DNA of 62,934 nucleotides, counting the filler, from Octopus bimaculoides (Eukaryota): the NCBI RefSeq assembly GCF_001194135.2. It is 6 parts of 6 records of this genome, joined end to end, with 100 filler letters (N's around TTAATTAATTAA, not from the genome) between each part and the next. Parts side by side here need not be neighbours in the genome. Positions count along the whole stretch, not along the records: positions 31,377 to 52,456 come from NC_068986.1; 5 more parts are not named here. One strand, written 5' to 3'. A program made the position numbers and the translations under genes. Every line of letters starts with the position of its first letter. Position 1 is the stretch's first letter. Under the pieces are notes generated by a model. The model searched no databases and was not told the origin of the DNA. It saw nothing but the letters and a program-made list of their open reading frames with translations. Shown in pieces: positions 33,176-50,129 of this stretch.

Positions 33176-33395
33176 CCCTTTGGTATTCAGTACATTCTGT
33201 CAAAAGCAATGTTTATTTATCCATATTGTTTTTAATTAATCCTACATTATTTCTGAGCTTCAAGATTTTGATGATGTGATTGTTTATTTTTAAAATGACT
33301 CTGTAGGGTAGGTATGAAAGGCCAGATATGATCAGTTTGAAGATAAAACAGATAGAATATTTTGACTGGTTATGACCGGTTTAAATGCTAAAGTG
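33176..33395. mobile_element. Degenerate piggyBac-like (TTAA) MITE
   Basis: ccctttggtattc ... aatgctaaagtg|ttaa imperfect termini. Confidence 0.4.
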
Positions 33396-33724
33396 TTAAA
33401 CTATCAAAACTAAACTTCACCACCACCACCACCACCATCATTTAACCTCTGTTGTCCATGCTTGACAGAAGTGATAAGCTGAGGGGCTGCACCAGACTCT
33501 TTTATGTGCCAATGGCATAGCACCAATATCTACCATGACTACAATTTCACTTGGCTTGATGAGTCGTCTTCTCCAGCACAGCATATTGCCAAAGATCACA
33601 GTCATTTGTCATTGCCTCCAAGAGACCCAACACTCGAAAGATTCTTTTTACATGTGCTACCAGCACTGGTACTAGTTACACAACACCGGCACATTGCGTC
33701 TATGAGGCCAAATGCTTGAAAGGA

Positions 33725-33945
33725 TTTAGTAGATAGAAACTGAAAGAAGCCCGTTGCATGTATGTATGTATGTCTCTTTGCACCCCCCCAACATCACTTG
33801 ACATCCGATGCTGGTGTGTTTACGTCGCCGTAACGTAACAGTTCGGCAAAAAGAGACTGATAGGCTTACAAAGAATAAGTCCTGGGGTCGATTTGCTCGA
33901 CTAAAAGGTGGTGCTCCAGTCAAATGACTGAAAGAAGTAAAAGAA
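33725..33945 (+). mobile_element. 3' half of the CORE-like composite SINE
   Basis: ggtgtgtttacgtcgccg..gttcggcaaaaagagac..ggggtcgatttgctcgactaaa..aatgactgaaagaagtaaaag. Confidence 0.75.
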
Positions 33946-35585
33946 TATCTACAAAAACACATGAAACACAAAGAAAAGTGGAAACAAAAACAGGTTTGTT
34001 TTATTCACATTTTAAAAGTCAATTTGCTTTGGTGATCAACAAGAATGTAAAAATACAAATAAAAAAAAACATTTATTACAAAAATATGGATATGCTGCTG
34101 CCTTAAACCATTCTTTTCCAGTTCCAGAGTTCTTATGTGTCTCAGAAATGTTCAGCAACTTTTGTCACATTAAGAAGAATAAACTTATAGAAAGGCACAT
34201 TATGAGATCTCCAATGGCAACAAATTAAAACACAGATTAACCAACAACAAACAGTCATAATTATGAAATTGATGAACCAAACTTGAAAATAGACATCCAT
34301 AAAAGGAACTGCGATCCGGGTTAAATCAGTCGAAAGTTGAAAAAGCCAATTGAAGTACTTTTATAGACCCAGTTTCTGTTAGAAAAATGGCACAAAAGGA
34401 ACTGTAAATGGAAATAATTGAATCACAGACTAAGGAACTTCTATAACAAAGATTTTACGATAAATCTTTATTGCACTTCTTTTTTAAAACTTATTATTCT
34501 TGAAGAATCCTACCTTTATGAGAAAATAATACTATTTGATAATACTAATAAATAAATGATTGTAAGCTTTTTTCTGAAATCGAAGTGGTGAAGTAAAACA
34601 AGACCAAGATTAATAGAAGACAATTTATGAGCTGCAACCTCTCAGATGTCACCAAATATTGAATGCTTAGTTATTTTTATAACAATATACACACATATTT
34701 CTTATAAAAGAAATTTTCTTTAAAAATATTTGTATGATTTGTTTAGAGTAATATGCAGTGTACTAAATGCTACATTATGTTTGTTAAATTATAAATTGAA
34801 AGATTCGTCCTTCAATGTATAATGAGCAAAATTTCATAAGGTCCATACTTGAAAAAGAGACGTTCTTGTGTTGAAGTTACAGATGACGGAATACAAACTG
34901 ACAACCACTGAGTCTGTTGTCTGATCTTCAATTGATTTAGTCTAATATCTTACTGATTGACAGCTAAATAAATATTAAGGTTTATCATAAAGAAGTAACT
35001 GGTTCTACAAATTGAAGTAAAATGGTTTCATTTAAATATTAGAATATTATTTGTTCCATGTTGCATTTTCAAAAACCAAAAGTTACTAGTACCTTAAATA
35101 TAGAAATAAATTTTGATCTGAATGAGTAGCTAAACGAAGATAACACCACAAGACAATTCATCATGCAACAATGAAAATCTAATCAGTAATCTTTAAACCA
35201 TAGTGGAAATTAAAAATGTGAAACTACAATGCATGAATATCATTTGTGATATAAAAACTTATTTGCATTTTCCCATAAAGGCCCATTTTAAAAATGTTCC
35301 AATCAACAAAAGCAAAAAAGCAAAAATATGAACCAAAAACTAAAGAGATTTTGTGTGCATATCTAGTATTTGTTTCAAACATTGAATGGCAACACCACAG
35401 CCAACTGACAGAAACCAATGAAAAAGTCTCTTCTTTCTTCTAAAATATTGCAAGTTTTAGACAACATCATACAATTTGTTCATTTAGCAATTTGATAAAT
35501 TGTTAGATTTTTGTTGCTTACCCTCCACCCAAACAGATTTATTTCTGAAAATTTGCTTTCTTTTTGTTAGCCTTGAATTTTCTTC

Positions 35586-35846
35586 TTAAACACTAGAATC
35601 TTCACCATTGATATCATTATCCGTCATTTCATTACATTTGCCCACGCCATCCTCATCACTGTCATTTTCTTCAGCAGGAGAATCACCATCACAGTTGTCT
35701 TTCTTCACCAAATCTAATCCATTGTCTTTATTACTACTACTGCTGCTGTTTGAATGTTGACTTGCTGTGTCAGAGTCTAACAAATCTACACCAGAGTCAG
35801 CATCCGATTCTTCATTTGCTTTATCACTAAAAGTATCTTGGTTTTT
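35586..35846 (-). CDS. SRA/YDG-only protein, last coding exon (acidic tail KNQDTFSDKANEESDADSG...EDSSV*)
   Basis: Acceptor ttctatcttacag|AAA in phase 0 matches the upstream exon; 261 bp open to TAA. Confidence 0.75.
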   Translation of the reverse strand, partial: KNQDTFSDKANEESDADSGVDLLDSDTASQHSNSSSSSNKDNGLDLVKKDNCDGDSPAEENDSDEDGVGKCNEMTDNDINGEDSSV

Positions 35847-36080
35847 CTGTAAGATAGAACAAAGATCATCAAAACCTGAGAAACGAAGACAAAATAATAA
35901 TTCAATGCAGTAAACTTAAGAAAGAATGATCAAATGCTTGCTTTATTGGGTCATCTCATCTATTTACATTCTGCTACAGACACACTGTTCAGACATCTGG
36001 GTTTTTAAGAAATCAAGTTTTTATTAGAAATCAGTGTTTATGCACCAATAGTTACCACCATGGTCACTGGAGTGTAGACC

Positions 36081-37186
36081 GCTTCAGTTATACACTCATT
36101 ATCTGACATACAGCATCAGTTATACACTCATTATCTGACATACAGCATCAGTTATACACTCATTATCTGACATACAGCTTCAGTTAAACACTCATTATCT
36201 GACATACAGCTTCAGTGATACACTCATTATCTGACATACAGCATCAGTGATACACTCATTATCTGACATACAGCTTCAGTTATACACTCATTATCTGACA
36301 TACAGCTTCAGTTATACACTCATTATCTGACATACAGCATCAGTTATACACTCATTATCTGACATACAGCATCAGTTATACACTCATTATCTGACATACA
36401 GCATCAGTTATACACTCATTATCTGACATACCNNNNNNNNNNNNNNNNNNNNNNNNNNNNNNNNNNNNNNNNNNNNNNNNNNNNNNNNNNNNNNNNNNNN
36501 NNNNNNNNNNNNNNNNNNNNNNNNNNNNNNNNNNNNNNNNNNNNNNNNNNNNNNNNNNNNNNNNNNNNNNNNNNNNNNNNNNNNNNNNNNNNNNNNNNNN
36601 NNNNNNNNNNNNNNNNNNNNNNNNNNNNNNNNNNNNNNNNNNNNNNNNNNNNNNNNNNNNNNNNNNNNNNNNNNNNNNNNNNNNNNNNNNNNNNNNNNNN
36701 NNNNNNNNNNNNNNNNNNNNNNNNNNNNNNNNNNNNNNNNNNNNNNNNNNNNNNNNNNNNNNNNNNNNNNNNNNNNNNNNNNNNNNNNNNNNNNNNNNNN
36801 NNNNNNNNNNNNNNNNNNNNNNNNNNNNNNNNNNNNNNNNNNNNNNNNNNNNNNNNNNNNNNNNNNNNNNNNNNNNNNNNNNNNNNNNNNNNNNNNNNNN
36901 NNNNNNNNNNNNNNNNNNNNNNNNNNNNNNNNNNNNNNNNNNNNNNNNNNNNNNNNNNNNNNNNNNNNNNNNNNNNNNNNNNNNNNNNNNNNNNNNNNNN
37001 NNNNNNNNNNNNNNNNNNNNNNNNNNNNNNNNNNNNNNNNNNNNNNNNNNNNNNNNNNCGCTTCAGTTATACACTCATTATCTGACATACAGCATCAGTT
37101 ATACACTCATTATCTGACATACAGCATCAGTTATACACTCATTATCTGACATACAGCATCAGTTATACACTCATTATCTGACATAC
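36081..37186. repeat. 32-bp minisatellite cagttatacactcattatctgacatacagc(a/t)t in the last intron, interrupted by a gap
   Basis: About 11 units before and about 4 after the N-run; period 32 (36085 to 36117). Confidence 0.95.
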
Positions 37187-37603
37187 CCTCCGATCTATAC
37201 ACCTTTGGGTCTCTATTACAGATTGAGCCAGGTATGATTAGTAAGTCAACTGGTTGAACCACGAATTGAACCTGTAACCCAGACTGCTTACTGAGGTCTT
37301 AACACCAATTGAAACTGCTCACATCTTTACACTAGGCACAGGGGATGGCTTCAGTCATTTAAACCAACTTTGATGGAATTAGAGAAGAACTTCGTAATGT
37401 AAGACACCATATCATAAGTCTAGCATTAAACAATGTTATGTAGAATACTGAAAACATTATAAAATGCACTTGAGGTATGTACGCTGCTGTTTCTAGTAGC
37501 CCAAGTGACTACATAGAGGCTCTATCAAAAAGTTATACCATTGCTTTTATTCTACAGCACTCATTAGCATAATTAAACAATAAGCAATCTACAATCAGCT
37601 TAC

Positions 37604-37713
37604 CATAGTCCATGGAGGAGGAGCTTGGTTGGGACAGCGCCGGAGTGCAAATTTCCACACACCAAAACCAGAAAGACCAATGGTGTACCAATATTTTTCC
37701 ACAGTGTAGAGGC
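37604..37713 (-). CDS. SRA/YDG protein exon: (G)LYTVEKYWYTIGLSGFGVWKFALRRCPNQAPPPWTM
   Basis: ag|GC...ATG|gtaag; SRA C-terminal segment completing the YDG motif. Confidence 0.93.
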
Positions 37714-37934
37714 CTATAGCATGAAGAAAAAGAAAATATAAAAATACATGCAAAACAACTTTGAATCACATGGCTTTGCAATGTCCAGGGATATAATAGA
37801 AGATGATTGCCCAAGGTACCGTGCAATGGGATTAAACTCTAAGCAACATGGTTGAGAATCTAATTTAACCACATAGCCATGCCAGTGTTAAGCTCAGAAA
37901 GCCAGTTCAGCCATCTTAATAAAATAATCCTTAC

Positions 37935-38088
37935 CATCATAACGATATCCTTCTTCAGGGGCAAAATCACTCTGGGATTTATAACCTCGGATCACTCTAA
38001 CAGGCCTTCCTAGTTCACAGTTGCGGCTCAGAGCTAAGTTTCCTCGAGTCAATGTTTGGTCTTTAGACTGTGGTGCTGTTCTTAAATT
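37935..38088 (-). CDS. SRA/YDG protein exon: NLRTAPQSKDQTLTRGNLALSRNCELGRPVRVIRGYKSQSDFAPEEGYRYD
   Basis: ttttcag|...G|gtaag; PVRVIRG and APxxGYRYDG are SRA hallmarks. Confidence 0.95.
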
Positions 38089-38419
38089 CTGAAAAGGTGA
38101 AAAAAAAAAAAACTGTTTTTAAAAAATCTGAGAAGATTCATAGCAATCTGAGTAAGCAATAGTTAATTCTGTAAGAGTTGATTGTGGAAGACGTTTGCCA
38201 AGGGAACCACACAGTGGGACTGAACCCAAGGCTGCCTGGTTAGGAAGCAAGTTTCTTAACCACACAGCTACACTTCAGTTGTAGTACACTAACCAACAGT
38301 AAAAATAAAATAACTACTGAATTTAGTTAGCGATAAGGCCAAAACTTTCTCTTTATTCATACATTTTTGGGGTTGTGTCAATGTAAGAAATTCTTATTGT
38401 TTCTTCACACACCTGCAGA

Positions 38420-38815
38420 ATCATCATCATCATCAGCGTTTAACATCCACTTTCCATGCTGGCATGGGTTGGATGGTTTTACTGGGGACTGGTAGGCCAG
38501 GAGGCTGCATCAGGCTCCAATCTCATCTGGCAAAGTTTCTACAGCTGGATGCCCTTCCTAACACCAACCACTCGGAGAGTGTAATGGGTGCTTTTACGTG
38601 CCACGGGCACGAGGGCCAGTCAGGCGGTACTGGCACCGACCACACTTAAAAGGTGTTTTTTATGTGCCACCTGCACAGGAGCCAGCCCGGCAGCACTGGC
38701 ACCGACCTCGCTCAAATGTCTTTTACGTGCCAGTAAGGCAACGCTGGCAATGATCATGCTCGAATGGTGCTTTTTAAGTGCCATCAGCAAGGGAGCCAGT
38801 CAGTGGCCCTGGCAA
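38420..38815 (-). mobile_element. Intronic (GAT)n-tailed element
   Basis: catcatcat..gtttaacatccactttccatgctggcatgggttgga.. plus modular body. Confidence 0.8.
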
Positions 38816-38833
38816 TGAAGAAATACAACTTAC

Positions 38834-38871
38834 CTTTGGATTTGTTTTGGTACCTCTGAGATCTCGACCTC
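38834..38871 (-). CDS. SRA/YDG protein exon: (G)GRDLRGTKTNPK
   Basis: ccag|GA...AAG|gtaag; 38 bp, phases 1 and 0 fit both neighbours; matches SRA YTGxGGRDL. Confidence 0.92.
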
Positions 38872-39718
38872 CTGGTAATACGAAGAAGAAAGGATTCAAT
38901 GATAGCAACACAAATGACTTGGTAAAATGTAGAATGGTAGAGTAAAGCTAAGAACTAATGTCACAATATATTCCAGTGGTTGACTGTTTAGATCGCTAGA
39001 CTAGTGGTTAGTGGTCTAAAACACAAGCGCTATCAGTTTGTAGGCGCAGTTACCCCCCACCCCCAGTGGGTTTAAACAAACTGACACTAGATGGTGTTAG
39101 AGTGTGAGATTCTGGCACAACCCCTTAGGACTATCTCTTTCTGCATTGAGACACGAGACTATGAAGATGTAACCTAGCTGTCTCTCCCACACCACACGCC
39201 AGTAGCAGATAGGAGCTAACACACAAAAGACCATGGCCTCCAAGCATCAAACCATTTTCATTTATCATTCAGCTGGTGTATATATGTGTAGCCACATTAA
39301 AGGTATATAAAGTTACAGCCTTGTTTTATGTATTCTTTATACCAGGTTTCCTGTCAAATGATATTACAGCACTGTGCTTCAGCATAGTTTCTGCAGCTGG
39401 ATGCCTTTCCAAACACCAACTACTTTACAGATTACGCTGGGTGCTTTGTTTTTTTTCATGCTAGCTGCACTGGTGAGTTCACTATGCAAGACTGTGAACC
39501 TCCAATAGAAGTAATGTTATGCTAGATGAGGGTTAAAATGTGAGAGAAGGGGCCAAAACAGAACAGGTTTCTTGCTGTAGAGGAGTCACATGGCTAAACA
39601 TATTTTAGAAAAGAAGGTGCGAGTTATCAGGGTGAAGCTGGAAAGAGAGATAAAAGCGTGGTGATGAGGTGTATGGATGGACATTAACTGAATTAGAAAA
39701 GAAGAATGAAAGACCTAC

Positions 39719-39834
39719 CTGCTCCTGTGTATGTGAAGCATTCTCCGAAATCTAAATCATCTTCATAGCCACCTGACAGAGCAATAGAATATGCTCCTTC
39801 TGTTTCACTTCCATGAATACCAGCAACTGTAGGT
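39719..39834 (-). CDS. SRA/YDG protein exon: (R)[38 protein letters not shown]
   Basis: ttcag|A...G|gtagg; AGIHG, [13 protein letters not shown] and FTYTG are SRA methylcytosine-pocket motifs. Confidence 0.95.
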
Positions 39835-40610
39835 CTGAACAAGATGTGCGTGTGTGTATGATTAAGAAAGAAGAAGAGAAACCATCAATAGTAACAGAGT
39901 TGGAAGATGTTGCTGCAAAATAGCAACAAATCCAAACTATTTTTAAACATTTAAAATAGTGTGTGAATGGACAGCATAACGCACAGGACTTCATTCTACC
40001 TCTTGTCCAAATACAGTATTCCTCATTTACGATGCATGAATGCATTCAGATTTCTGGGATTTTATTAATTCTTTAAACTAAGTAAAGCATTTAACAACAG
40101 GAAATTTCAAGAGATTAACACTAAACCCAAGTAACCCCAAAGAATTCCATCGTTCATTATGTTCCCTTAAATAGGTAAGACGCTAATTTTAGTAGGATAA
40201 GAACAGATATATACAGCAAAAGAGATCCAAATAATCTAGAGTAACTTGTAAAATTTTCAAAATTGTAATTGTATTTCTATATAAAAATATCATTCAGATT
40301 CTAATCAGACACAATCAATTAGAACTAAGGCCAATTTAAAAAAGTGACTATTTTATCTTTATTCTAATAATGTATCTAGAACTACATTGTCCAATGTGAC
40401 CAGCTGTTTTTAAGAAAAGAGGATATGATTCAAGGAAAATCTGGTTGCTATCTTTAGCATGTTGAGTGACCACATTAAACAAAAACAATTGATTTAACTG
40501 TCCCATTCTTATTCTCTCTAAGTTCACTAAACAAGCATATTTGGCCCAAATATGTGTGAATTAGTAACTGAAATTCTCACTCTTCCAAGTATGACAATCA
40601 AGTAACTTAC

Positions 40611-40671
40611 CTGTGGATTCCAGCATAGCTACACTCCACTCGAGACTGCCACCAGGTACCAACTTCTACAC
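40611..40671 (-). CDS. SRA/YDG protein exon: (G)VEVGTWWQSRVECSYAGIH(R)
   Basis: acag|GT...AG|gtaagt; homologous to the UHRF1 SRA start G.PVG..W..R...S..GVHR. Confidence 0.93.
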
Positions 40672-40904
40672 CTGTCGGATACAAGAAACGTGATAAATTT
40701 TATTGACAAGGTTGGTAATAAATAAAAGCTATTATTTATTAAAGAATACATATTTATGTCACTCTTTGACTGATTTCACTTATTGGACTGCAACCATGCT
40801 GAGAAACAACCATCAAAGGTGTTGGTCACTTACACTGACTCTAGAATTTTACTTCTTGATAATTTTGTAACAAGAAAAAGTAAAATTGACCGAGGCATTA
40901 AGGG

Positions 40905-41337
40905 ATGCATAGGCCACAGGATATGGTCTCACTTGGCTTGCCGGGTCTTCTCGAGCACAGTATATTTCCAAAGGTCTTGGTCACTTGTCATTGCCTCGGT
41001 GAGGCCTAATGTTTGAAGGTCGTGCTTCACCACCTCATCCCAGGTCTTCCTGGGTCTACCTCTTCCACAGGTTCCCTCTACTGCTAGGGTGTGACACTTT
41101 TTCACACAGCTATCCTCATCCATTCGTACCACATGACTATACCAGCACAGTCATCTCCCTTGCACACCACATCTGGTGCTTCTTAGGTCCAACTTTTCTC
41201 TCAAGGTACTTACACTCTGTCGAGTATGCACACTGACATTACACATCCAGCAGAGCATACTGGCTTCGTTCCTTGCAAGCTTATGCATGTCCTCAGCAGT
41301 CATGGCCCATGTTTCACTGCCATGTAGCATGGCTGTT
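40905..41337 (-). mobile_element. RTE LINE 3' fragment
   Basis: AMLHGSETWAMT..LCWYSHVVRMDEDSCVKKC..VEGTCGRGRPRKTWDEVVKHDL. Confidence 0.9.
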
Positions 41338-41973
41338 TGTGAAATTTTGAATTTAGTTCACGGACCCCTAGTACTACCTCTGTGGATGACCAGAGGTCCA
41401 CGGACCCCAGGTTGGGAACCACTGATCTAGGAAGACAATAACTTTGAATAATAAGAATACACAGAAAGTAATGGGGATAGAATAAAATATAATTTGTTCA
41501 TGTCTATGTGTGAAATGAATGGAATACTTCAACACCTACCCAACTTATGCAGACATGGAATTAAAAAAATCATTGTTTTATTGCTCTCTTTTCCATGCTT
41601 GCAACCATCAAATTAAATTCATTGAGGCAGATTTTCTATGACTAGATTCCCTTCCTGTTATGAACTGCCTAAGGAAGGTATATATATCTCCATGCTCAGA
41701 TATGTTTTCAGGGAAGACTGGCAACGAAGGACACTGCTTGTATGATGGTTGGGAAGCAAGTTCCTCAAAATCACAGCAATACTTGCACCTACAAGCCACA
41801 CAGGTGCATGAATAAAGAGACACCTGTCCAAACCGTCATTTGCTGTGGGATTTAACCCAGAATCACTGATTCTGAAATGGAACTTCTTAAACCTACAGAG
41901 ACATCTAAGGAAAGCTATGACAATGACAGAAGCTACACAGAGTATTGTTATTAGCAAGGATAAGAAACCTCAC

Positions 41974-42076
41974 CTTCAATTGAACCAAATGTATTTTCTC
42001 GAAACTGAGGAATTCTTTTAGCTGGAGACGGTTTATCCTCATCAAGGAGTTCAATGAAATTGTTTTCAGATGGTTT
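41974..42076 (-). CDS. SRA/YDG protein exon: KPSENNFIELLDEDKPSPAKRIPQFRENTFGSIE(G)
   Basis: ttttttctag|AAA...G|gtgag; FGSIEG joins into the SRA start motif FGxIxG. Confidence 0.88.
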
Positions 42077-42373
42077 CTAGAAAAAACAAGAAAATTGTTA
42101 AAATTAGGGGCAGGGGGAAATCTGTAAAAAAATGTTACCATTAGCACAGTGAAGTTGCTGAAGACTTGTTATTTAGAGTTGTGTTTCTGACTTTTCGGTT
42201 CCTTAAATGGTTTAATCAGGACAGACTTCTGCATATGACCTTTGCAGAGCCTCCAAGACTGGCAGATAGCAAAATTAATGCACTTCAGTTTAAATGAACA
42301 ATCATCACTTTAACCCCCACCACCTTTTTTAACCATATTTCTGTTGAAATTCAATTAATTTTGAAACTTTTAA

Positions 42374-42651
42374 CCCATTACCTACCAGTGATCTCATACG
42401 AGATCACTTAAAAATTACAAATTTTGTAATTATCTGTCAATATTTACACATATCTAACCTTTTTGCTATATCTACTAGGTATATTTCTCTGATATTCAAA
42501 TGAGGTTTGCTAACTTTTCACCCAATATCTCGCTTATTTCTATTTAAAATGTTATTTTGATCATGTCAGCATGTTTCTAAGGCTGTTTTATGCTAGAAAT
42601 CAAAGTTTCATAAAAAAAATTCCAGTTAATAGAATTAGGGGAGGTAATGGG
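42374..42651. mobile_element. piggyBac-like MITE with TTAA target-site duplication
   Basis: ttaa|cccattacct ... aggtaatggg|ttaa (10-bp perfect TIR, CCC/GGG ends). Confidence 0.7.
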
Positions 42652-42954
42652 TTAAAGAAAGTAGTAAAATAACTATTTTTTAAATTGGGAGCGGGAACAT
42701 AAATCAACATGGAATTTGGATGTACGTTTTAATTTAGATCATATCAACCCTTTAGTTACCATATTTCTGCTAAAATTCACTGCTTTTGTTTCAATTAATT
42801 TCAAAAATAAAGAACTTATTAAAATAACTGCCATTATTAAACTGGTGTTTGGAATATAAATAAACATGAAATTTTTATAAGAGGTTTTAATTAAAATCAC
42901 TTAAACCATGAAGTTGGTATCCTAGAACCATAGGTGATCTCAAAAACCAGATTG

Positions 42955-43215
42955 GCATCATCATCATCATTTAGCGTCCATTGTCCATGCTGGCATGGGT
43001 TGGACAGTCTGACCAGGGCTGGTAAGCTGAGAGGCTGCACCAGACTCCAGTCCGATTTGGCATGGTTTCTACAACTGGATGCCCTTCCTAACACCAACCA
43101 CTCCATTCGTGTGACACCAATATCTGCCACAATTTTACTTGGTCCGAAGAGCCTTCTTCTCAAGCACGGCATAATGCCAAAGGTCTTGGTCATTTGACGT
43201 TGTCTCTGCGCAAAT
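42955..43215 (-). mobile_element. Intronic (GAT)n-tailed element
   Basis: catcatcatcatcatttagcgtcc..ccatgctggcatgggttggac..ctggatgcccttcctaacaccaaccac. Confidence 0.8.
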
Positions 43216-43410
43216 CTTTGAAGGCCTTTTTTTTTTGTTAGTAATTAGGTTTATTGTAAAGTTAAAACCCTTTTTTGTCTTAAAACAAAGACATTGTGAC
43301 TGAAGGATGAACTATAAACGAATTCTTGGAAAGCTGATAGGTTTTACTGACTTAGATAACACAAGACCAACATTTTTTCCCAGAAGAATAAACAAAAATT
43401 ATTTTCTTAC

Positions 43411-43560
43411 CTCTCCTCTCAGTCTACAAGAACGTCTCACGGCACCAACACTGATTGAACCTTCATCTGTGGTAGAGGGCACAGATGATCTTTTGGAAGC
43501 CTTTGGTGTCCACTGTGCTTTGCGTTTAATTGGTTTGTGGACCACTTGAAATTTCTCCAG
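43411..43560 (-). CDS. SRA/YDG protein exon: LEKFQVVHKPIKRKAQWTPKASKRSSVPSTTDEGSISVGAVRRSCRLRGE
   Basis: tttccttttag|CTG...GAG|gtaaga; 150 bp, phase 0-0, open. Confidence 0.8.
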
Positions 43561-43649
43561 CTAAAAGGAAAGGACAGAAATGATGACGATGATTCACAAA
43601 ATTTGTTGAAGTGGCTCCTCATTGAACTGCATTTACAAAGGGGCCTGAA

Positions 43650-43921
43650 CCATATATATTATCATCCCCCTGGACTGGTTTGTGCGGGTGGCACATAAAA
43701 GACACCATTTCGAGCGTGGCCGTTTTCGTGCGGGTGACACGTAAAAGCACCCACTACACTCTCTGAGTGGTTGGCGTTAGGAAGGGCATCCAGCTGTAGA
43801 AACTCTGCCAAATCAGACTGGAGCCTGGTGTTGCCATCCGGTTTCACCAGTCCTCAGTCAGATCGTCCAACCCATGCCAGCATGGAAAGCGGACGTTAAA
43901 CGATGATGATGATGATGATGA
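43650..43921 (+). mobile_element. Young intronic (GAT)n-tailed element
   Basis: Near-identical to 31376-31614. Confidence 0.85.
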
Positions 43922-43954
43922 TTATTGTCATTTCAGGTTAAAAATTATACATCA

Positions 43955-44270
43955 GTGCAGGAATAGGTGTCTGGTAAGAAGTTTGCATCACGACCACATG
44001 GTTCCAGGTTCAGTCCCACTGCGTGGCACCTACTATGGCCTCGAGCCAGCCAAAACTTTTTGAGTGGATTAGGTAGATGGAAACTGAAAGAAGCCCGTCA
44101 TATGTGTGAGTGTGTGCCCTCGCTTTACATCCCTTTAATCTAGTGGTTCAGTGAAAGAGACTGATAGAATAAATACCTAGGACAGAGGTTGATTTATTTG
44201 ACTTAAAAAATTCAAGGTGGTGCCCCAGCATAGCCACAGTCTAATGACTGAAACAAGTAAAAGATAAAAG
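43955..44270 (+). mobile_element. CORE-like composite SINE (internally shortened)
   Basis: ggttcagtcccactgcgtggcacc..ggaaactgaaagaagcccgtc..aatgactgaaacaagtaaaag. Confidence 0.75.
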
Positions 44271-44871
44271 ATCCTAAGAAAATCTCTTGCGCAAAAAGTT
44301 GGGAACCTATCTTATTTTGCAGATTTTAATAGTGTGCTGTTGTGGTTGAAAGTGAAAAGTGGACAAGTGCCTACCAAAAATGAAGTCCAGCATGGTTCTA
44401 AATATCATCATAATAATTTAATGTCCACTTTCATGCTGGCATGCGTTGGATGGTTTGACAGGAACTGGCCAGCTGAAGCACTACTCAGGCTTATCAAGTT
44501 ATTTAGACTTTTGAAGCTTTTTAACAAAGCAGGCGGTAAAAAATAAATAATACTCATCCTTGTGCAGACAAAAAGCAATATATAACATGGAATTTTATTT
44601 CATTAAATATAAAGCAAAGGCATGATTTTCATGAGAGAGGAAAAAATAACTTCTCATTAGAGAATTAAAAATAAGAAGGATGTATTTTCTATTTAGCTGA
44701 TGAGGTCTAATAGCATCGGAACATAGAATTACCTCCCATGATCGTCAAGAGAGAAAATATTTAATGACCACACTAGAATTGTTCTAGTTAGCTCCGCCCT
44801 GCATTAAATATCAACACTAACTTTACTACTTTATATTTGGCGACTTTCTCATCTGGATATGTATGGTTTAC

Positions 44872-45018
44872 TTGCAAAACAACTGTTTCGAATCGACAAC
44901 ACGTAGTCGCTCGAACAGCTAAAAAGATCTCCAAAATTACGACTCCTGTAGAAGATAAAAATTTAGAAAACACGCGGAAGAAAATTTGAAGTGGGACGAA
45001 TGAAATGGAGGCCCCCAT
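44872..45018 (-). CDS. Candidate first coding exon of the SRA gene (MGASISF...VVLQ)
   Basis: ATG at 45018 is open to a phase-0 donor CAA|gtaaac compatible with the next exon; no recognisable homology, so it may instead be 5' UTR. Confidence 0.35.
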
Positions 45019-45019
45019 A

Positions 45020-45166
45020 ACGATAGCCAGCGCTTCCTGGCGGAAAACAGATTTTACTAATTTTCTAGGAACGATAACTCTCTAAACAATGGATTATTTA
45101 TCACACTGCCAGCAACCGTGTTCACCGGAATTGGATGTTATATATATATATATGATGAGGAAACAG
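45020..45166. promoter_or_regulatory. Candidate bidirectional promoter and plus-strand non-coding first exon
   Basis: CpG-containing; cttcctggcggaa and caccggaa ETS-like motifs; plus-strand donor cag|gtatgt at 45166/45167. Confidence 0.45.
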
Positions 45167-46679
45167 GTATGTGGCGAAATTATATCGGTCTCTCTCTCTC
45201 TCTCTCTCCCCACCTCTGTTAAGCTAGTGAACTAATCTCAGTTAAGAACGAGGCCCTACATGTAAATATACGTGTGTATGTATGTATGTGAAAAGATGGA
45301 ATTAAAGCCCCGAGCGAGCCGAGAGCAGCATCTCGACTCCTGTTCCTGATTTGTTTTTAACTAAATGTTATATCGTATTGTTAATGGCCCTTAGTAACAG
45401 CATGAGACGCTATTTCATGTCTCTTCTGCCAGTCTTCTTTTGTGTAATCTTTCTCCTCGGCCCACTTTAATCCCCGTTTGTCTTTTAGAAGCATTTATCA
45501 ATCGCTGACACCTTTAAGTGATACATTATTGTGAGTCGGTAACAATCCGGATATTAAAAAAATATATTAGTTGAAAAGCCATAAATTGAAGCCGGAAAGG
45601 AACGCATGCTGGAAAGATTAACTAAACATTATGTGGTATTATCGAGGACTAACAGCTTAACATCTTTCATTACAGAAAACTTTCTGAAGGAAGGAGGGAA
45701 CGAACGTGTGGCTTTGGAATATTTTTTCAATTCTAAGAAGTAAAAAAGGAGAGCGGAAGTACATGAGAATCACTAAAGATTCTCAGCTTTAAAACAATCG
45801 GAAAACGAGCCACCGAGGAAATCTTTTCATAGTTACTCGGTCTGCTAGAAAGAGTAGCCAGACCTTCCTCGAATCATACATGTTTGAAGCATTTTTGTTT
45901 CTGTAAGGATCGCCTGTCAAAAAGATGATTGTGGAAGAGAGTTAATTTAAAAGACTTGCCCACCATTTCTAGCAGACGTGTTGTCACATGGAGCATGTAT
46001 TAATAACACAAGTTCCATGTGGGAATTTTAAGAGAAAAGGGTTGTGCCGACACTGGTTCCAATGAAAGTGTTTTTTTCAACGTGGAACCATTTTCTGAGT
46101 GGAATACAAACTGTTCTGCCCAAGCAACCACAAAAACAACCAAACTTTAAGAAGATGCTTTGGACGTAGGGAAGTTCCGCTGGCATCTCCCAGCATTAAA
46201 CAAAAATAGTCGAAGGACACAAATTTAACTTCGTTATAACAATAATTAGCCATACCTACACAAGAGTATCCACTGTCTTTGTTTTCTGAGGCATACCAAG
46301 TTTACCTATACTTAATGTATACGCGTTCTCAGATTAAAAAAATATATATATATATTTAAAGCTCGCTGCATAATCACAAAATTCCACGTTCGATCCCAGA
46401 ATGTGGGGCAAATGGCTTCTGCTCTCATTTCGGTTCCACGTAAATACCTTGTTATGAATGAAGTTTAGTAGAAGAAACAATGCAGAAAACTGTAGCGTGG
46501 AAGCACCGGTATATAAAAAAAAAAAAAAGTCGGTGCTCTCTATGTTGTCACATCGTGCCATAACTTAGCGGGTCAGCAAATAAATCTTTGAACTCCAATA
46601 ACAAACTAGGGAACAAATCCTCATTTTGCGTTTGATTTTCCAAACTTAACATTTCGCCACTAGATTCCAGTCCTTTGCT

Positions 46680-47100
46680 GAATTTGTAGGATCCAGCTTC
46701 CTAAGATCAACTTACATCATTTCTTTCTATGCCTAAACCCTTCCACAGGTTCTTTCCGCTTCAAATTTCTTGTCACTTCTTTATCCGACTCATCATCCGA
46801 AAGCAGCATACGTCCTTACCACCTCAAATCCTCTCTATTGTACGCAACATCTGATTCCTCACCCACCTCTTCCTCTAGGGTATGTGCGCTGCATTTCTTT
46901 TTACCTTTCGCACAACCCCCATATTCATTGCCTAGGTTTTATTACCATGCAACATCGCACCAAGTGCCACACAATTTGCTCTTTACCCCTACCGCCATCC
47001 CCCAACAGAGGCAACTTTTCTCATTACATTCTCCCTTTGGTCACTCTGCTTTTGCGGTACCTGCCAACCCAAACAATTTCATAGGTGCTCTTAAAAGTCG
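46680..47100 (-). mobile_element. Highly degenerate RTE 3' fragment
   Basis: TLEEEVG..AYNREDLRW*GRMLLSDDES aligns loosely with the RTE LRW.GHV.RMD..S motif seen at 41130-41220. Confidence 0.4.
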
Positions 47101-47944
47101 TCTGCCAGTCTGCTTGTGATTTCCAATTCATATCTTGCCCAAAGTTTACATTGGACAGGCTGTATGGATTTACTACACATTACATATAAAGTATAGTGGC
47201 TACTTCTCCGATTGCCGGGAATCTTTTCGATATTGACACATTTGTCTTAATTTTCGATTCTAACCTTATATACGGAGCTTTTGTTTTTTTTCTTTTCCTT
47301 ACATTTACATATATGCTCTGAGAGATGGCAGTCACAGACGTGGATGCCTGATTAAGAAGTTAATAATTATATACTACTTGATAAATGAAACTCATTTTTA
47401 AAAAAAATCTTGTCTTCAGATTTCGTGTTGATAAATAGAATTGATTGCTAAGTTGAAATGAAGATTGTTATAGGCAATGGTTTAGCAACACTTTTTTCTA
47501 ACCCATATAATAAAGCATAAAAAAAAAAACCCATCTAAAAGTATTTTGCCCATTTCTTTCATTTCCAATTATTTTTTGTTGATTTTTCAAGTAATCCAAT
47601 AAACTTTATTTTCCATAAATCAATTCCTAAAAATCACTGCATAAATGTTGTGATCCTCTTATTTTACCTAATGTCTTTCATTTTTCCGAAGGTAGTAAGT
47701 TATAGTTTATGGGAGATTTCACTGCTACTCTCAACCAGTTGAACATTCAAGTGGAAATTCCTTTGTTTAGTCCCCACTGAATACTTCCTTCAGGCCATTC
47801 TGGTTGTTAGATTTTGAATTCTTTTCTCAATTGGTTTCGTATTAGTTCACATCTAGACTGATGCAGTACAAGTTACACCTTCATATTGCTTATCTTGTTT
47901 AGACTTGATGAAAAAAACTTTTTCAAAATCAAAATTTTTTTTGT

Positions 47945-48130
47945 TTATCACCATTTAACATCCATTTTCCATGGAGGCATGGGTTGGATGGTTCGACCGG
48001 ATCTGACGAACGAGAGCACTGTATCAAACTCCAATATCAGTATTGGCATAGTTTCTATGGCTGGATGCCCTTTTCTATGCCAACTGCTTTACAGAGTGCG
48101 TTGTGTGCCTTTTCTTGTGGCATCAGTACA
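47945..48130 (-). mobile_element. Diverged (GAT)n-family element
   Basis: catttaacatccattttccatggaggcatgggttggatg..ggctggatgccc. Confidence 0.65.
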
Positions 48131-48450
48131 AGTGAGATCACGAAATAACTTGCAAGACATACGGGAGTGTAGTATTGAGGGAGGTAGCTTTATGCCAGGT
48201 GTCAAAAGGTTGAAATATGAGAAAGACAGAAACAGGGGGTCATGTTCAAGAGAAGATACACGGCTGCCCCCTGTTGGAAAGGCAGGAGAGAGAATAGAGA
48301 CAGAGGATCAGAAAGGGTGGGGGCTATAATCATTTTGCTGCTGCCTGTCAGATGTTGCTCAAAATTAATACAATTGATTTTTCTTACAGATTTATCAAAT
48401 GGCAGTAACAAGGAGTGAAATGAAATAAGAAGAGAAGGAAGTCCATCAAA

Positions 48451-49164
48451 ATGCCTCAGGTTTTACTTGAAGAAACTCACCGAAACCTAACATATCAAGA
48501 AAACAAACACGATGATTTCCTTCTCATTGAAGTGGAAGCAATTCTTCGACACCCAAACCCAGCAAAAATTACACTGTCCCCACCACTCTTCCCCAAAGGT
48601 GGTGATGTTTACCTTTACAAATCTGGTCCCCATGACCGAAGAGTCAAAGATAAATACTGGTGGGTTAACAGAGGGAACAACTTCCACTCAAAAAGTCAAA
48701 AGCGCCATGCCATTATGAAGACATACTTCAGTCTAAAAGATAGAAATGGCAGCAAGAAAAGTGATTGCCTTAATGGATTCAGGCGCCACATCTACCGCCT
48801 GGCGGATGCAAAAGATGACAGGAGAACATTAATGCTTGTTCACTATCTTGGAGATGAAAAACTACACACAACAATCCCTCATGGTAACAGCAAACACAAA
48901 AAAAGTCAGAATGAGAGTAACAGCCATCAAGTAAAAACAATGCTAAGCAATGACTTGGACACAACAACAATGACCACCTCCTTACAAAATTTGAATGCAG
49001 CTAAAAATGAACTGAGAACCTCTGATGGTGTTGGAAGCCGTGGCAAGATTATAAAGTCGCCAATCAATAACCTGAAGCAACCAAGTTTTACCATTCAAAC
49101 ATTAAAAGACAACAGCAGTTCAGATGATTTGAAAATCTGTTTGGAGAAATTAAAACACAAATCG
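48451..49164 (+). CDS. CG-1 (CAMTA-type)-like DNA-binding domain protein, probable first coding exon (unspliced ORF runs to 49227)
   Basis: 258-codon uninterrupted ORF; ITLSPPLFPKGGDVYLY..KDKYWW..KTYF..FRRHIYRL..LVHYLGDE..PHGNSK parallels CG-1 (P..GS..LY..RKDGY.W..F.RR.YWL..VLVHYL); acceptor ttttcttacag| at 48389, donor TCG|gtaaga at 49164. Confidence 0.8.
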
Positions 49165-50129
49165 GTAAGATTTCTTGTTTCAAATGACCTTTTCGGTTCT
49201 CCAGCAGAACCAAAAAGGTTATTTTAGAGCCTTGCTGAAAATTTGAAGTGCTGTGTTCATTCAAATTTACAATAGATATGCATTTATGCTTATATTCTCC
49301 TCCATCACTGTCTGACCCCCACACATCCCTATTTTCTGATCTACGGGTTTATTGCTATTATCCCCGTTTTTCTTCACCCCCATTCCCTACATTCACTCCT
49401 ACTCCAATCTCTAACCACCTGTTGCTCTCCTCTCAAACTAATGAATTTATCCACCCACCCTACCCAATCTTGTGCATTCCTTCTCTTACACTCACCTTCT
49501 TGTACCTTGAAAGTAGGCACCAACACCCGGTCAGCGCCACCACTGTCCTTTCGGTTTTTTCCACCCACTTTTATACAACATGCAAGGTAGCTATATATCT
49601 CCTCTACAGCAAAGCACCTGTCCTTCTGTCGTGCTAAAACTTGGCATCAAGCCACCTACCCCTGCCTACTGCAGCTCCACTCTGTTAAAGGTTGTTTTCC
49701 TCATTGTCTTCTAAGTTAATTGGCGACCTCACCAGGGTCAGTGTTGCCAAATGGCTGGCATGAAAAAGAGAAACCATACAACTGTCCTCTGGCTTGCTGG
49801 ATGCTGTGAAACCATACAAACCCATCACAGCATGGAAGATGAATGTTGAGTGACAGTGATGATAATTTACATGTAGCTGGTCACCATAGGAACAGAAAGC
49901 AGAAGAAATGTAAACAAATGAAAAACGTTCCACAAAGAACATGCTTAAAAAATGAGAATTGGAAACATTGAGAAAATGGTTATTTCCATAATAGTAAAGC
50001 TAATGGCCAAATGTTGGGTTTTGATTAAGCTTTGAATATTAACCATCTCAGACCTGGGCCCTTGTGTCTAACTTTACCCTCCACCTGGGCTCCTGAACAA
50101 AAAAAAAAAAAAAAGAAAAAAAGGTTGCA

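What the first reader, a model, noticed from the sequence alone, without database searches (positions are those of the whole stretch)
35586..43560. Stand-alone SRA/YDG methyl-DNA reader gene lacking the other UHRF1 domains
Seen: eight exons (150, 103, 61, 116, 38, 154, 110, 261 bp) with GT-AG boundaries join in frame to 330 codons plus stop. They contain a complete SRA domain (FGSIEGVEVG..W..R; AGIHG; [12 protein letters not shown]; FTYTGAGGRDL; PVRVIRG; GYRYDGLY). No RING exon follows, and no UBL, Tudor or PHD exon was found upstream. Established: in vertebrates SRA occurs in multidomain UHRF1/2, which bind hemimethylated CpG. Inference: an invertebrate SRA-only protein that reads modified cytosine independently of ubiquitin ligase activity, for example as an adaptor or a UHRF1 competitor. 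Similar proteins may already be annotated as 'UHRF1-like' without functional study.
Basis: partly seen in the sequence, partly recalled or inferred. Interest (0 to 1): 0.72.

Follow-up and report, generated by a model that had tools for sequence, protein, structure and literature searches.

The report
Octopus stand-alone SRA methyl-DNA reader gene
This is a real, already annotated Octopus bimaculoides gene for a small protein that has the methyl-cytosine-flipping SRA domain of UHRF1 but none of its other domains. Its conserved front end resembles the part of CDCA7 that recruits the HELLS chromatin remodeler, which points to a second, untested way of coupling DNA-methylation reading to chromatin remodeling.

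Summary
Eight minus-strand exons (150, 103, 61, 116, 38, 154, 110, 261 bp, all AG..GT) join to 330 codons plus TAA and contain a full SRA domain (Pfam E=1.7e-55).

They are residues 29-358 of Octopus bimaculoides XP_014774607.1 (UniProt A0A0L8H8G0, 358 aa). Macchi et al. 2022 mention this protein as "YDG_OCTBM" and describe a separate five-domain UHRF1 in the same genome. The ATG exon (28 codons) lies outside the piece.

The N gap sits in a 32-bp minisatellite inside phase-0 intron 7. Four cephalopod orthologues, including an intron-free cuttlefish-type contig, show the same junction across it. No UBL, Tudor, PHD or RING was detected anywhere on the gene strand.

The protein belongs to a conserved animal and fungal family with three parts: an N-terminal helix, an HMGN-like RRSxRL motif, and an SRA domain with an invariant 6-residue finger insertion. 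An acidic tail follows.

The N-terminal module also matches plant CDCA7 orthologues (E about 1e-8). It aligns, weakly, exactly onto the HELLS-binding leucine zipper of mammalian CDCA7.

Best reading: a non-enzymatic 5mC-reading adaptor, possibly an SRA-based counterpart of CDCA7. The gene is known. The CDCA7 link appears to be new and is untested.

The parts
43411..43560 (-). Begins at a splice acceptor. Encodes the basic KRK stretch and the HMGN-like motif.
   Evidence: AG/GT boundaries and frame; 100% match to P0001 residues 29-78
43414..43437 (-). Codons for RRSCRLRG (aa 70-77), an HMGN/Dsup-like candidate anchor for the nucleosome acidic patch.
   Evidence: R70, S72 and R74 are conserved in 110-113 of 120 family members. 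The motif RRSARLSA and the roles of its arginines are described in PMC12487698. Coordinates.
41974..42076 (-). Coding exon 3, 103 bp: acidic linker and start of the SRA domain (..NTFGSIEG).
40611..40671 (-). Coding exon 4, 61 bp (VEVGTWWQSRVECSYAGIHR).
39719..39834 (-). Coding exon 5, 116 bp: thumb loop (PTVAGIHG) and 5mC pocket (GGYEDD, FTYTGAG).
38834..38871 (-). Coding exon 6, 38 bp (GRDLRGTKTNPK): first half of the extended finger loop.
37935..38088 (-). Coding exon 7, 154 bp: second half of the finger (NLRTAPQSKDQ), helix, PVRVIRG, GYRYDG.
37604..37713 (-). Coding exon 8, 110 bp: last SRA strands (LYTVEKYW..PPPWTM). Ends in phase 0.
35586..35846 (-). Last coding exon, 261 bp: acidic, Ser/Asn-rich tail (86 aa, 25 D+E against 6 K+R, pI 4.05) plus the TAA stop (35588-35586).
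   Evidence: The same tail is present in the O. sinensis and O. vulgaris orthologues, and a similar one in Argonauta and the cuttlefish-type contig.
36433..37058 (.). Assembly gap (626 N) inside intron 7. It is not coding.
   Evidence: (the same gap is present in GCA_001194135.2)
36084..36431 (.). 32-bp minisatellite (10.9 copies) next to the gap. The same unit resumes at 37063-37186.
   Evidence: phase check
37063..37186 (.). The same 32-bp minisatellite (3.9 copies) on the other side of the gap.
43561..52456 (-). The part of intron 1 that lies in this piece. The ATG exon (aa 1-28, the N-terminal helix) lies beyond 52456.
   Evidence: no Pfam domain on the gene strand

Best explanation
The locus encodes residues 29-358 of the O. 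bimaculoides protein 'YDG_OCTBM'. This is the octopus member of a conserved animal and fungal family of small, non-enzymatic SRA proteins.

Proposed mechanism:
1. The SRA domain binds 5-methylcytosine in CpG DNA, probably hemimethylated, by flipping the base out. It would use the same thumb valine, tyrosine/aspartate pocket and finger arginine as UHRF1. The finger is 6 residues longer than in UHRF1 and is invariant within the family.
2. The protein has no E3 ligase. It acts as an adaptor through a CDCA7-like N-terminal module. An amphipathic helix (aa 4-22) resembles the HELLS/DDM1-binding helix of CDCA7. About 50 residues further on, an RRSxRL motif resembles the HMGN/Dsup anchor for the nucleosome acidic patch.
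3. The acidic, serine-rich tail is disordered and probably regulatory.

Shown: gene structure, domain content, family membership, residue conservation, the sequence link to plant CDCA7. Inferred: DNA specificity, nucleosome binding, HELLS binding, biological role.
For: - Gene model and identity.
- SRA domain: Pfam E=1.7e-55. Best solved relatives are UHRF1 SRA domains (E about 1e-49). In the AF2 model the SRA core has block pLDDT of 88-98. The Foldseek top hits are UHRF1 SRA bound to hemimethylated CpG, TM-score about 0.74 normalised to the target, 51% identity.
- Residues (human UHRF1 numbering, self-checked against the aligned sequences): the V446, G448, Y466, Y478 and R491 equivalents are conserved in 107-120 of 120 members. 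D469 is D in 93 and N in 26. PKNLR in the finger is invariant in 120 of 120.
- Family: hundreds of 300-500 aa proteins with SAD_SRA as their only Pfam domain, from molluscs, echinoderms, amphioxus, hemichordates, annelids, cnidarians, a sponge, crustaceans, thrips, spiders and fungi. 96 of 120 carry both N-terminal motifs.
- N-terminal helix: pLDDT about 90.
- CDCA7 link: an exhaustive HMMER search with the N-terminal profile found 1480 representatives. Among the 85 longer hits scanned, 24 have SRA and 2 have zf-4CXXC_R1 (Camellia and Cuscuta, E=1.5e-8 and 9.3e-8). By my reading of the sequences, these two keep the three ICF-associated residues and are therefore class I CDCA7 orthologues. The helix alone scores about 20 bits on them.
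- Three profile-profile comparisons all place family residues 3-23 on mammalian CDCA7 residues 112-132 ([19 protein letters not shown]), P=4e-4 to 1e-2. Shuffle controls: 15-19 of 3000 reach the real score for the primate sequence, 0-1 of 3000 for echidna.
- Literature: that helix/leucine zipper is required for HELLS binding (PMC11343034; PMC11343032). The plant equivalent is predicted to bind DDM1 (PMC12718391). The RRSAR arginines anchor HMGN2 and Dsup to the acidic patch (PMC12487698). An SRA-only protein of Cryptococcus binds hemimethylated DNA and promotes 5mC (10.1101/149385).
Against: - No experiment exists on this family.
- The match to animal CDCA7 is short (about 20 columns) and weak (hhalign probability 4-35%). 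Only the plant link is strong.
- The CDCA7 counterpart of RRSxRL in mammals (RSRSRILG) matches imperfectly and was not aligned by hhalign.
- Pfam HMG14_17 does not hit.
[quoted passage not shown] My alignments disagree for the thumb, pocket and arginine. They agree that the NKR finger is altered and that S481 is A here (E in most of the family), so specificity could differ.
- An isolated SRA domain cannot bind hemi-mCpG inside a nucleosome core (PMC11343034), so coupling to the acidic patch would have to work on linker or unwrapped DNA.
- O. vulgaris has a predicted isoform without the helix.
- Presence of HELLS in octopus was not checked.
Confidence: 0.55

Rival explanations
1. UHRF1 competitor or decoy. 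The SRA-only protein occupies hemimethylated CpGs, blocks UHRF1 and DNMT1, and so dampens maintenance methylation in a genome where fewer than 10% of CpGs are methylated.
For: Same fold and pocket as UHRF1 SRA. No E3 domain. A canonical UHRF1 coexists, and octopus methylation is low (PMC9476566).
Against: A pure decoy does not need an N-terminal helix and an RRSxRL motif that are conserved from fungi to amphioxus. The same module sits on CDCA7, a positive factor for methylation. The Cryptococcus SRA-only protein promotes 5mC rather than reducing it.
Confidence: 0.12
2. Adaptor for a partner other than HELLS. The SRA domain reads 5mC, but the N-terminal helix recruits something else (for example a DNMT, a histone modifier or a repair factor). 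The likeness to the CDCA7 helix would then be convergent or generic.
For: The animal CDCA7 match is weak. The same module occurs in front of unrelated or unknown C-terminal regions in oomycete and other proteins, and with HRDC, Myb or FYRC hits in single proteins. This is compatible with a general chromatin-targeting module.
Against: The two reader domains identified among its fusion partners, SRA and zf-4CXXC_R1, are the two known hemimethylated-CpG sensors (PMC11343034). That is what a shared downstream partner would predict.
Confidence: 0.2
3. Reader of a different base modification or lesion (5hmC, 5fC/5caC or another flipped base) rather than hemimethylated 5mC.
For: The pocket residue equivalent to UHRF1 S481 is A in cephalopods and E in 97 of 120 family members. 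H445 is T. The finger is 6 residues longer with a different invariant sequence. UHRF2 SRA, a close structural match, prefers 5hmC (4pw5 among the hits).
Against: Thumb V, G448, Y466, D469, Y478 and R491 are all kept. The top structural matches are 5mC complexes. The only SRA-only protein tested binds hemi-5mC.
Confidence: 0.1
4. Artefact: a truncated or mis-joined model of a larger UHRF1-type gene, or a decaying UHRF1 duplicate, with the join across the assembly gap being spurious.
For: Two assembly gaps lie inside the gene. The public name is 'E3 ubiquitin-protein ligase UHRF1'.
Against: It has its own ATG exon with a family-specific motif and its own stop. Contig L002 (1639 nt) from a related cephalopod carries an uninterrupted ORF with the same architecture. 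Orthologues in O. sinensis, O. vulgaris and Argonauta have the same junctions. No other domain is found on the gene strand. The gap lies in an intronic minisatellite. The architecture is conserved across phyla.
Confidence: 0.03

Closest known systems
SRA domain of UHRF1/UHRF2 (e.g. PDB 3CLZ, 2ZKD, 3F8J, 4PW5)
   Same: Same fold (Foldseek E about 1e-19, TM-score about 0.74 normalised to the target, about 50% identity). Sequence E about 1e-49. Thumb valine, G448, the Y466/D469/Y478 pocket and the R491 equivalent are conserved.
   Different: No UBL, tandem Tudor, PHD or RING. The finger loop is 14 rather than 8 residues between GGRDL and QSxDQ, with invariant PKNLR. H445 is T and S481 is A (E in most of the family). 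The 15-residue UHRF1 insertion before PVRV is absent. It carries an N-terminal helix plus RRSxRL module that UHRF1 lacks.
CDCA7 (zf-4CXXC_R1 hemimethylated-CpG sensor and HELLS/DDM1 adaptor)
   Same: Same order of parts: helix, basic stretch, arginine/serine motif, linker, then a domain that reads methylated DNA. The N-terminal profile hits plant class I CDCA7 at E about 1e-8. It aligns onto the mammalian CDCA7 leucine zipper / HELLS-binding helix, residues 112-132.
   Different: The reader domain is SRA (base flipping, contacts both grooves) instead of the zinc finger (major groove, works on nucleosomal DNA). No cysteine-rich domain is present. The similarity to animal CDCA7 is short and statistically weak. 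HELLS binding is untested.
Cryptococcus neoformans Uhrf1-like protein (CNAG_00677, uhf1)
   Same: An SRA protein without Tudor or RING. It is shown to bind hemimethylated DNA selectively and to promote 5mC in parallel with H3K9me (10.1101/149385). Basidiomycete proteins with the same N-terminal module plus SRA exist (P0157 Cylindrobasidium, P0178 Parajaminaea).
   Different: It works with Dnmt5, which animals lack.
HMGN proteins and tardigrade Dsup (RRSARLSA nucleosome-binding motif)
   Same: The core R-R/K-S-x-R-L is nearly invariant in the family (RRSCRLRG in octopus, RRSARLRGKA in amphioxus). It lies in a disordered basic region, as in HMGN. An acidic C-terminal tail is also shared.
   Different: No Pfam HMG14_17 match was found. 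The rest of the HMGN nucleosome-binding domain (SAKP..) is not kept. Binding to the acidic patch is inferred from the motif alone.
Plant SRA proteins (SUVH4/5/6/9, ORTH/VIM)
   Same: SRA fold and 5mC flipping (E 1e-22 to 1e-34).
   Different: They are fused to SET or PHD/RING domains and are more distant in sequence. They lack the family's finger and its N-terminal module.

Membership tests
SAD/SRA (YDG) domain superfamily, PF02182 | Full-length match to the Pfam model above its gathering score | tested here: met
   187 bits against a cutoff of 30.7, profile positions 2-148 of 148
SAD/SRA (YDG) domain superfamily, PF02182 | SRA fold | tested here: met
   AF2 block pLDDT 88-98 over the domain core. 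Foldseek top 40 hits are all UHRF1/UHRF2 SRA
SAD/SRA (YDG) domain superfamily, PF02182 | Residues for base flipping and the 5mC pocket (thumb V, G, Y/D/Y pocket, finger R) | tested here: met
   V136, G138, Y156, D159, Y168 and R187 are present and conserved in the family. S481 equivalent is A and H445 equivalent is T
SAD/SRA (YDG) domain superfamily, PF02182 | Binding to modified cytosine in DNA | not testable with these tools
   Needs EMSA, fluorescence polarisation or a crystal structure
UHRF1/UHRF2 (canonical E3 ligase) | N-terminal ubiquitin-like domain | tested here: not met
   No Pfam hit in the protein or on the gene strand upstream. The N-terminus is a family-specific helix
UHRF1/UHRF2 (canonical E3 ligase) | Tandem Tudor and PHD finger | tested here: not met
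   contig L002 has no such region
UHRF1/UHRF2 (canonical E3 ligase) | C-terminal RING finger | tested here: not met
   The ORF ends in an acidic tail and TAA. No hit in 31377-35585. A separate five-domain UHRF1 exists in this genome (PMC9476566)
UHRF1/UHRF2 (canonical E3 ligase) | NKR finger (G-N-K-R-T) | tested here: inconclusive
   The sequence is G-T-K-T-N-P-K-N-L-R-T. R is kept. N and K depend on where the 6-residue insertion is placed
Animal/fungal helix + RRSxRL + SRA family (unnamed; 'YDG domain-containing protein') | N-terminal helix S.YE..R.KN[IL]..N..[IV]L..LGL | tested here: met
   MCSEYEKLRLKNLADNRRVLAELGI in exon 1 of the same gene, outside this piece. N16 and L20 are at least 90% conserved
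Animal/fungal helix + RRSxRL + SRA family (unnamed; 'YDG domain-containing protein') | R-[RK]-S-x-R-[LIV]-x-G motif 30-40 residues before the SRA domain | tested here: met
   RRSCRLRG at aa 70-77, window 43437-43414
Animal/fungal helix + RRSxRL + SRA family (unnamed; 'YDG domain-containing protein') | 14-residue finger with invariant G-T-K-x-N-P-K-N-L-R-T-A | tested here: met
CDCA7 family | zf-4CXXC_R1 domain (PF10497) with 11 cysteines and the ICF residues | tested here: not met
   No such domain. The protein is therefore not a CDCA7 family member.
CDCA7 family | N-terminal HELLS/DDM1-binding helix (leucine zipper) | tested here: inconclusive
   Strong match to plant CDCA7 (E about 1e-8). Weak but correctly placed match to mammalian CDCA7 112-132
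CDCA7 family | Physical binding to and activation of HELLS | not testable with these tools
HMGN family | Nucleosome-binding domain with core RRSARLSA (Pfam HMG14_17) | tested here: not met
   Only the RRSxRL core is present. No Pfam hit at E<=5. This is a motif resemblance, not membership.

The most novel reading that the evidence does not exclude
The helix + RRSxRL + SRA family is a second adaptor for the HELLS/LSH remodeler, ancestral in opisthokonts and based on SRA: an 'SRA-CDCA7'. It would bring the remodeler to hemimethylated CpGs on linker or unwrapped DNA, while CDCA7 does so on nucleosomal DNA. Among the 120 best hits none is from a vertebrate, so the family may have been lost there. 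This would mean that one recruitment module was fused independently to both known hemimethylated-DNA sensors. It could also explain how HELLS or DDM1 is targeted in lineages or contexts that lack CDCA7.
Probability: 0.35. Interest if true: 0.85.

Novelty: new variant of a known kind. Interest (0 to 1): 0.6.

Why it matters
UHRF1's SRA domain and CDCA7's zinc finger are the two known eukaryotic modules that sense hemimethylated CpG. How HELLS/DDM1 is targeted when CDCA7 is absent or dispensable is an open question; PMC12718391 explicitly raises 'additional methylation readers'.

A widespread protein family joins an SRA domain to a CDCA7-like recruitment module and an HMGN-like nucleosome anchor. 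It has no functional study, and databases mislabel it as 'E3 ubiquitin-protein ligase UHRF1'.

The hypothesis is directly testable in sea urchin, oyster, Daphnia, amphioxus or fungi. For the octopus it also corrects two points. The gene is not an E3 ligase. And, by the alignments made here, its 5mC-flipping residues are largely intact, contrary to the brief published statement.

Tried and rejected
1. Exon 1 and the alternative O. vulgaris first exon (MNRGVVQK) were searched for inside the piece. Neither is there.
I re-ran with stop-free segments joined by X and found nothing.
3. The N-terminal helix profile against the PDB gave only chance-level hits, E>=0.06.
With the 84-aa N-terminal profile it returned only 13 short fragments and no new architecture, which was uninformative. 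The exhaustive representative search was what revealed the CDCA7 link.
5. Pfam at E<=5 on five family members gave nothing for the N-terminal region or the tail.
6. Oomycete and other proteins carrying the module have no significant Pfam domain. There is only a faint DUF3427 hit, E=0.16.
7. Literature searches for 'HMGN-like'+SRA, HLBH, and SRA-only/YDG found no paper describing this family's N-terminal module.
8. A phylogeny including invertebrate canonical UHRF1 was not built.
9. The pseudogene / truncated-model reading was rejected (see rivals).

Full report
WHAT IS IN THE SEQUENCE

The piece (31377-52456, 38% G+C) is 100% identical to Octopus bimaculoides chromosome CM046606.1 of assembly GCA_001194135.2. 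It is bounded there by N gaps and carries the same internal 626-N gap.

The gene is on the minus strand. Each is preceded by AG, and the first seven are followed by GT. They join to 993 nt, which is 330 codons plus TAA. The product contains a complete SAD/SRA domain (Pfam PF02182, positions 2-148 of 148, E=1.7e-55).

It is 100% identical over its full length to a 358-aa protein, XP_014774607.1 = UniProt A0A0L8H8G0. NCBI names it 'E3 ubiquitin-protein ligase UHRF1' and UniProt names it 'YDG domain-containing protein'.

The true first coding exon (28 codons, MCSEYEKLRLKNLADNRRVLAELGIRHS, followed by GTAAGT) lies about 2.4 kb beyond the end of the piece. It is separated from exon 2 by an 11.3-kb intron that contains a further 1008-N gap.

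THE GAP TEST

The gap at 36433-37058 lies in the intron between the exon ending ..PPPWTM (37604) and the last exon (starting at 35846). This is a phase-0 intron. The same 32-bp minisatellite unit flanks the gap on both sides, with 10.9 copies at 36084-36431 and 3.9 copies at 37063-37186. The gap is therefore most simply an unresolved stretch of that repeat.

No reading frame crosses it. All residues 29-358 of the annotated protein map outside it at 100% identity.

The join across the gap has independent support:
- O. sinensis and O. vulgaris proteins read PPPWTV|KNQDTFSDKANEESDADSGVDLLDSD.
- Argonauta hians reads PPPWSI|KNPDGFSDK.
- Contig L002 (1639 nt, run SRR9970012), whose 90% protein cluster includes Sepia pharaonis, carries an uninterrupted 370-codon ORF with the same order of parts and no extra residues at this point. 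Because the octopus gene has nine coding exons, an uninterrupted ORF most likely marks L002 as a transcript; this is an inference.

There is thus no sign of a hidden constitutive exon.

NO OTHER UHRF1 DOMAINS

I took every stop-free segment of at least 28 aa on the gene strand, upstream (43561-52456), downstream (31377-35585) and in the sequenced parts of intron 7. None gave a Pfam hit at E<=1. The full-length protein and four orthologues from other phyla hit only SAD_SRA above threshold, even with the reporting limit at E<=5.

Macchi et al. 2022 (BMC Biol, PMC9476566) describe the canonical O. bimaculoides UHRF1 (A0A0L8IC59) with UBL, TTD, PHD, SRA and RING. They mention this gene in one sentence as YDG_OCTBM, a shorter SRA-like protein. 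So the stand-alone architecture is real, and the gene is a separate locus from UHRF1. It is also already annotated and has been noted briefly in print.

THE FAMILY

The best 120 of 2983 database hits are almost all 260-550-aa proteins whose only Pfam domain is SAD_SRA. They come from molluscs, brachiopods, annelids, nemerteans, echinoderms, hemichordates, amphioxus, cnidarians, a calcareous sponge, Daphnia, barnacles, thrips, spiders and two early-branching fungi. No vertebrate is among them.

Aligned, they share four features:
1. An N-terminal motif S-x-Y-E-x-x-R-x-K-N-[IL]-E-[DE]-N-[RK]-[RK]-[IV]-L-x-x-L-G-L. N16 is present in 112 and L20 in 111 of 120; the remaining sequences are N-terminally truncated predictions.
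2. A basic KRK stretch.
3. R-[RK]-S-x-R-[LIV]-x-G, with R70 in 111, S72 in 110 and R74 in 113 of 120.
4. The SRA domain followed by QAPPPW and an acidic, serine-rich tail.

Of the 120, 96 carry both N-terminal motifs, including the fungal members.

AlphaFold2 with this alignment gives a confident helix for residues 4-22 (pLDDT about 90) and a confident SRA core (block pLDDT 88-98). The linker, finger loop and tail are disordered.

THE SRA DOMAIN IN DETAIL

By sequence, the nearest solved structures are mouse and human UHRF1 SRA (E about 1e-49), followed by UHRF2, SUVH6/5/4, the bacterial TagI endonuclease and SUVH9. By fold, the top matches are UHRF1 SRA bound to hemimethylated CpG (Foldseek E about 1e-19, TM-score about 0.74 normalised to the target).

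I used human UHRF1 numbering from my own knowledge and checked it for self-consistency against the aligned sequence. Conservation across the 120 members:
- Thumb V446: V in 118.
- G448: G in 120.
- Y466: Y in 119.
- D469: D in 93, N in 26.
- Y478: Y in 107, F in 13.
- R491: R in 120.
- H445 is T.
- S481 is E in 97 members but A in the octopus.

The finger has 14 residues between GGRDL and QSxDQ, against 8 in UHRF1. G-T-K-x-N-P-K-N-L-R-T-A is essentially invariant.

[quoted passage not shown] It does not hold for the flipping and stacking residues. Base flipping of a modified cytosine is the most likely activity. The strand and modification preference is open.

THE N-TERMINAL MODULE AND THE CDCA7 LEAD

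An exhaustive HMMER search of 1.84 billion representatives with the N-terminal profile (helix to RRSxRL, no SRA) found 1480 proteins at E<=1e-3. I scanned the 85 longer ones among the best 150 against Pfam:
- 24 have SAD_SRA.
- 2 have zf-4CXXC_R1, the CDCA7 zinc finger.
- A few single proteins hit HRDC, Myb, FYRC or DUF7923 + CCCH + SRA.
- The rest have no Pfam domain.

The two zinc-finger proteins are from the plants Camellia sinensis and Cuscuta campestris, at E=1.5e-8 and 9.3e-8 for the whole library. They carry the helix + RRSxRL module two or three times in front of the zinc finger. By my reading of their sequences, the zinc finger keeps the three ICF-associated residues. That is the class I, CDCA7-orthologue definition of Funabiki et al. 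(PMC10538959). The helix alone scores about 20 bits on them.

Three profile-profile comparisons all gave the same single local alignment. They used the helix only, the N-terminal module and the full-length family, each against a 10-species CDCA7 alignment. Family residues 3-23 aligned to CDCA7 residues 112-132 ([21 protein letters not shown]), with P = 4e-4, 1e-3 and 1e-2 and hhalign probabilities of 4-35%.

In shuffle controls, 15-19 of 3000 shuffles reach the real score for the primate sequence, 29-35 for mouse and 0-1 for echidna. A plant module fragment aligns to the same CDCA7 segment (46% identity over 24 columns, P=0.012).

That segment is the CDCA7 leucine zipper:
- It is required for HELLS binding (Hardikar et al. 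2024, PMC11343032).
- It corresponds to the 'HELLS-binding helix' that binds the CC2 helix of HELLS/DDM1. Deleting it abolishes the interaction (Wassing et al. 2024, PMC11343034).
- Plant class I CDCA7 has the analogous helix, predicted to bind DDM1 (PMC12718391).

The link to plant CDCA7 is strong. The link to animal CDCA7 is weak but lands on exactly the functional helix.

THE RRSxRL MOTIF

RRSARLSA is the conserved nucleosome-binding core of vertebrate HMGN proteins, and the tardigrade Dsup motif resembles it. Cryo-EM shows the second and last arginines of RRSAR anchoring in the H2A-H2B acidic patch, and serine phosphorylation is predicted to break the contact (PMC12487698).

The family consensus R-R/K-S-A-R-L/I-x-G-K (octopus RRSCRLRG, amphioxus RRSARLRGKA) matches this core in a disordered basic region. 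This is a motif resemblance only. No HMGN Pfam hit was found. The mammalian CDCA7 counterpart (RSRSRILG) is imperfect and was not aligned by hhalign.

MOST LIKELY MECHANISM

The protein is a non-enzymatic adaptor. The SRA domain flips out and binds 5mC, probably at hemimethylated CpG. The one SRA-only protein tested, from Cryptococcus, does this and promotes 5mC maintenance. The RRSxRL motif would hold the protein on the nucleosome face. The N-terminal helix would recruit a partner, and the best candidate is HELLS. The acidic tail (pI 4.05, 25 acidic against 6 basic residues) is a plausible autoregulatory or phospho-regulated element.

Shown: structure of the locus, domain content, family conservation, residue conservation, sequence relation to CDCA7's N-terminal module.
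Inferred: every binding activity and the biological role.

RIVALS

- A UHRF1 decoy. This is less likely, because it does not explain the conserved N-terminal module.
- An adaptor for a partner other than HELLS.
- A reader of another modification, given the pocket and finger differences.
- An annotation artefact, which is essentially excluded.

NOVELTY AND LIMITS

The gene and its SRA-only nature are already in databases and in one paper. RING-less 'UHRF1' homologues are flagged in Funabiki et al., and a fungal SRA-only protein has been studied.

I found no paper that describes the animal/fungal family's N-terminal helix, its likeness to the CDCA7 HELLS-binding helix, the HMGN-like motif or the invariant extended finger. 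The searchable library is limited to open-access texts, so this absence is not proof.

Not done:
- An SRA phylogeny with invertebrate UHRF1.
- A check that octopus encodes HELLS and CDCA7.
- Any complex prediction.
- A test of whether the Cryptococcus protein belongs to the same family.

Noticed in passing
window 48451-49224 (+ strand): A 258-codon ORF starting at an ATG lies antisense inside intron 1 of the SRA gene. It coincides with the start of a 683-aa gene called in the public annotation. It has a divergent CG-1 DNA-binding domain (the domain type of CAMTA proteins): PF03859, E=4e-5, 23.8 bits against a cutoff of 23.5, profile positions 11-114 of 116.
   Followed up: partly
window 36084-36431 and 37063-37186: A 32-bp minisatellite (TCAGTTATACACTCATTATCTGACATACAGCA, 97-100% matches between copies) flanks the assembly gap on both sides. 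The gap is probably more of the same array.
   Followed up: yes
window 31377-31616 and 43685-43924 (99% identical); also 38420-38612; minus strand about 41357-40932: Interspersed repeat copies (SINE-like) lie in introns and flanks. An ORF fragment (..RGRPRKTWDEVVKHDLQTLGLTEAMTSDQDLWKY..) looks to me like the tail of a retrotransposon ORF, but it gave no Pfam hit.
   Followed up: partly
O. vulgaris proteins P0122 / P0123 (not in the window): O. vulgaris has a predicted 338-aa isoform in which an alternative first exon (MNRGVVQK) replaces the N-terminal helix. If real, it would be a natural helix-less form. No equivalent exon was found in this piece.
   Followed up: partly
PMC9476566, Additional file 9 (Fig. 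S5G legend): [quoted passage not shown] Thumb V, G448, Y466, D469, Y478 and R491 are conserved. The discrepancy probably comes from how the 6-residue finger insertion was aligned.
   Followed up: yes
proteins P0169 (Aphanomyces, oomycete), P0245, P0208 (one search hits): The helix + RRSxRL module also occurs, sometimes repeated up to 4 times, in front of C-terminal regions with no significant Pfam domain. P0245 has only a faint DUF3427 hit, E=0.16. The module looks pan-eukaryotic and may be fused to further readers that are not yet recognised.
   Followed up: partly
proteins P0157 (Cylindrobasidium, 1058 aa), P0167 and P0178 (Parajaminaea, 531 aa): Basidiomycete proteins (P0157, P0178) and an unnamed 1137-aa protein (P0167) carry one or two copies of the module followed by an SRA-like region. 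P0178 has the family's finger (GTPSNPKNLRTAPQ). P0157 has a Pfam SRA hit and adds DUF7923 and a CCCH zinc finger. These may be relatives of the Cryptococcus Uhrf1-like protein.
   Followed up: no
L001 38504-39345 (downstream neighbour, outside the window): The next gene downstream on the chromosome is a glycoside hydrolase family 31 (alpha-glucosidase-like) gene. There is no functional link to the SRA gene.
   Followed up: no
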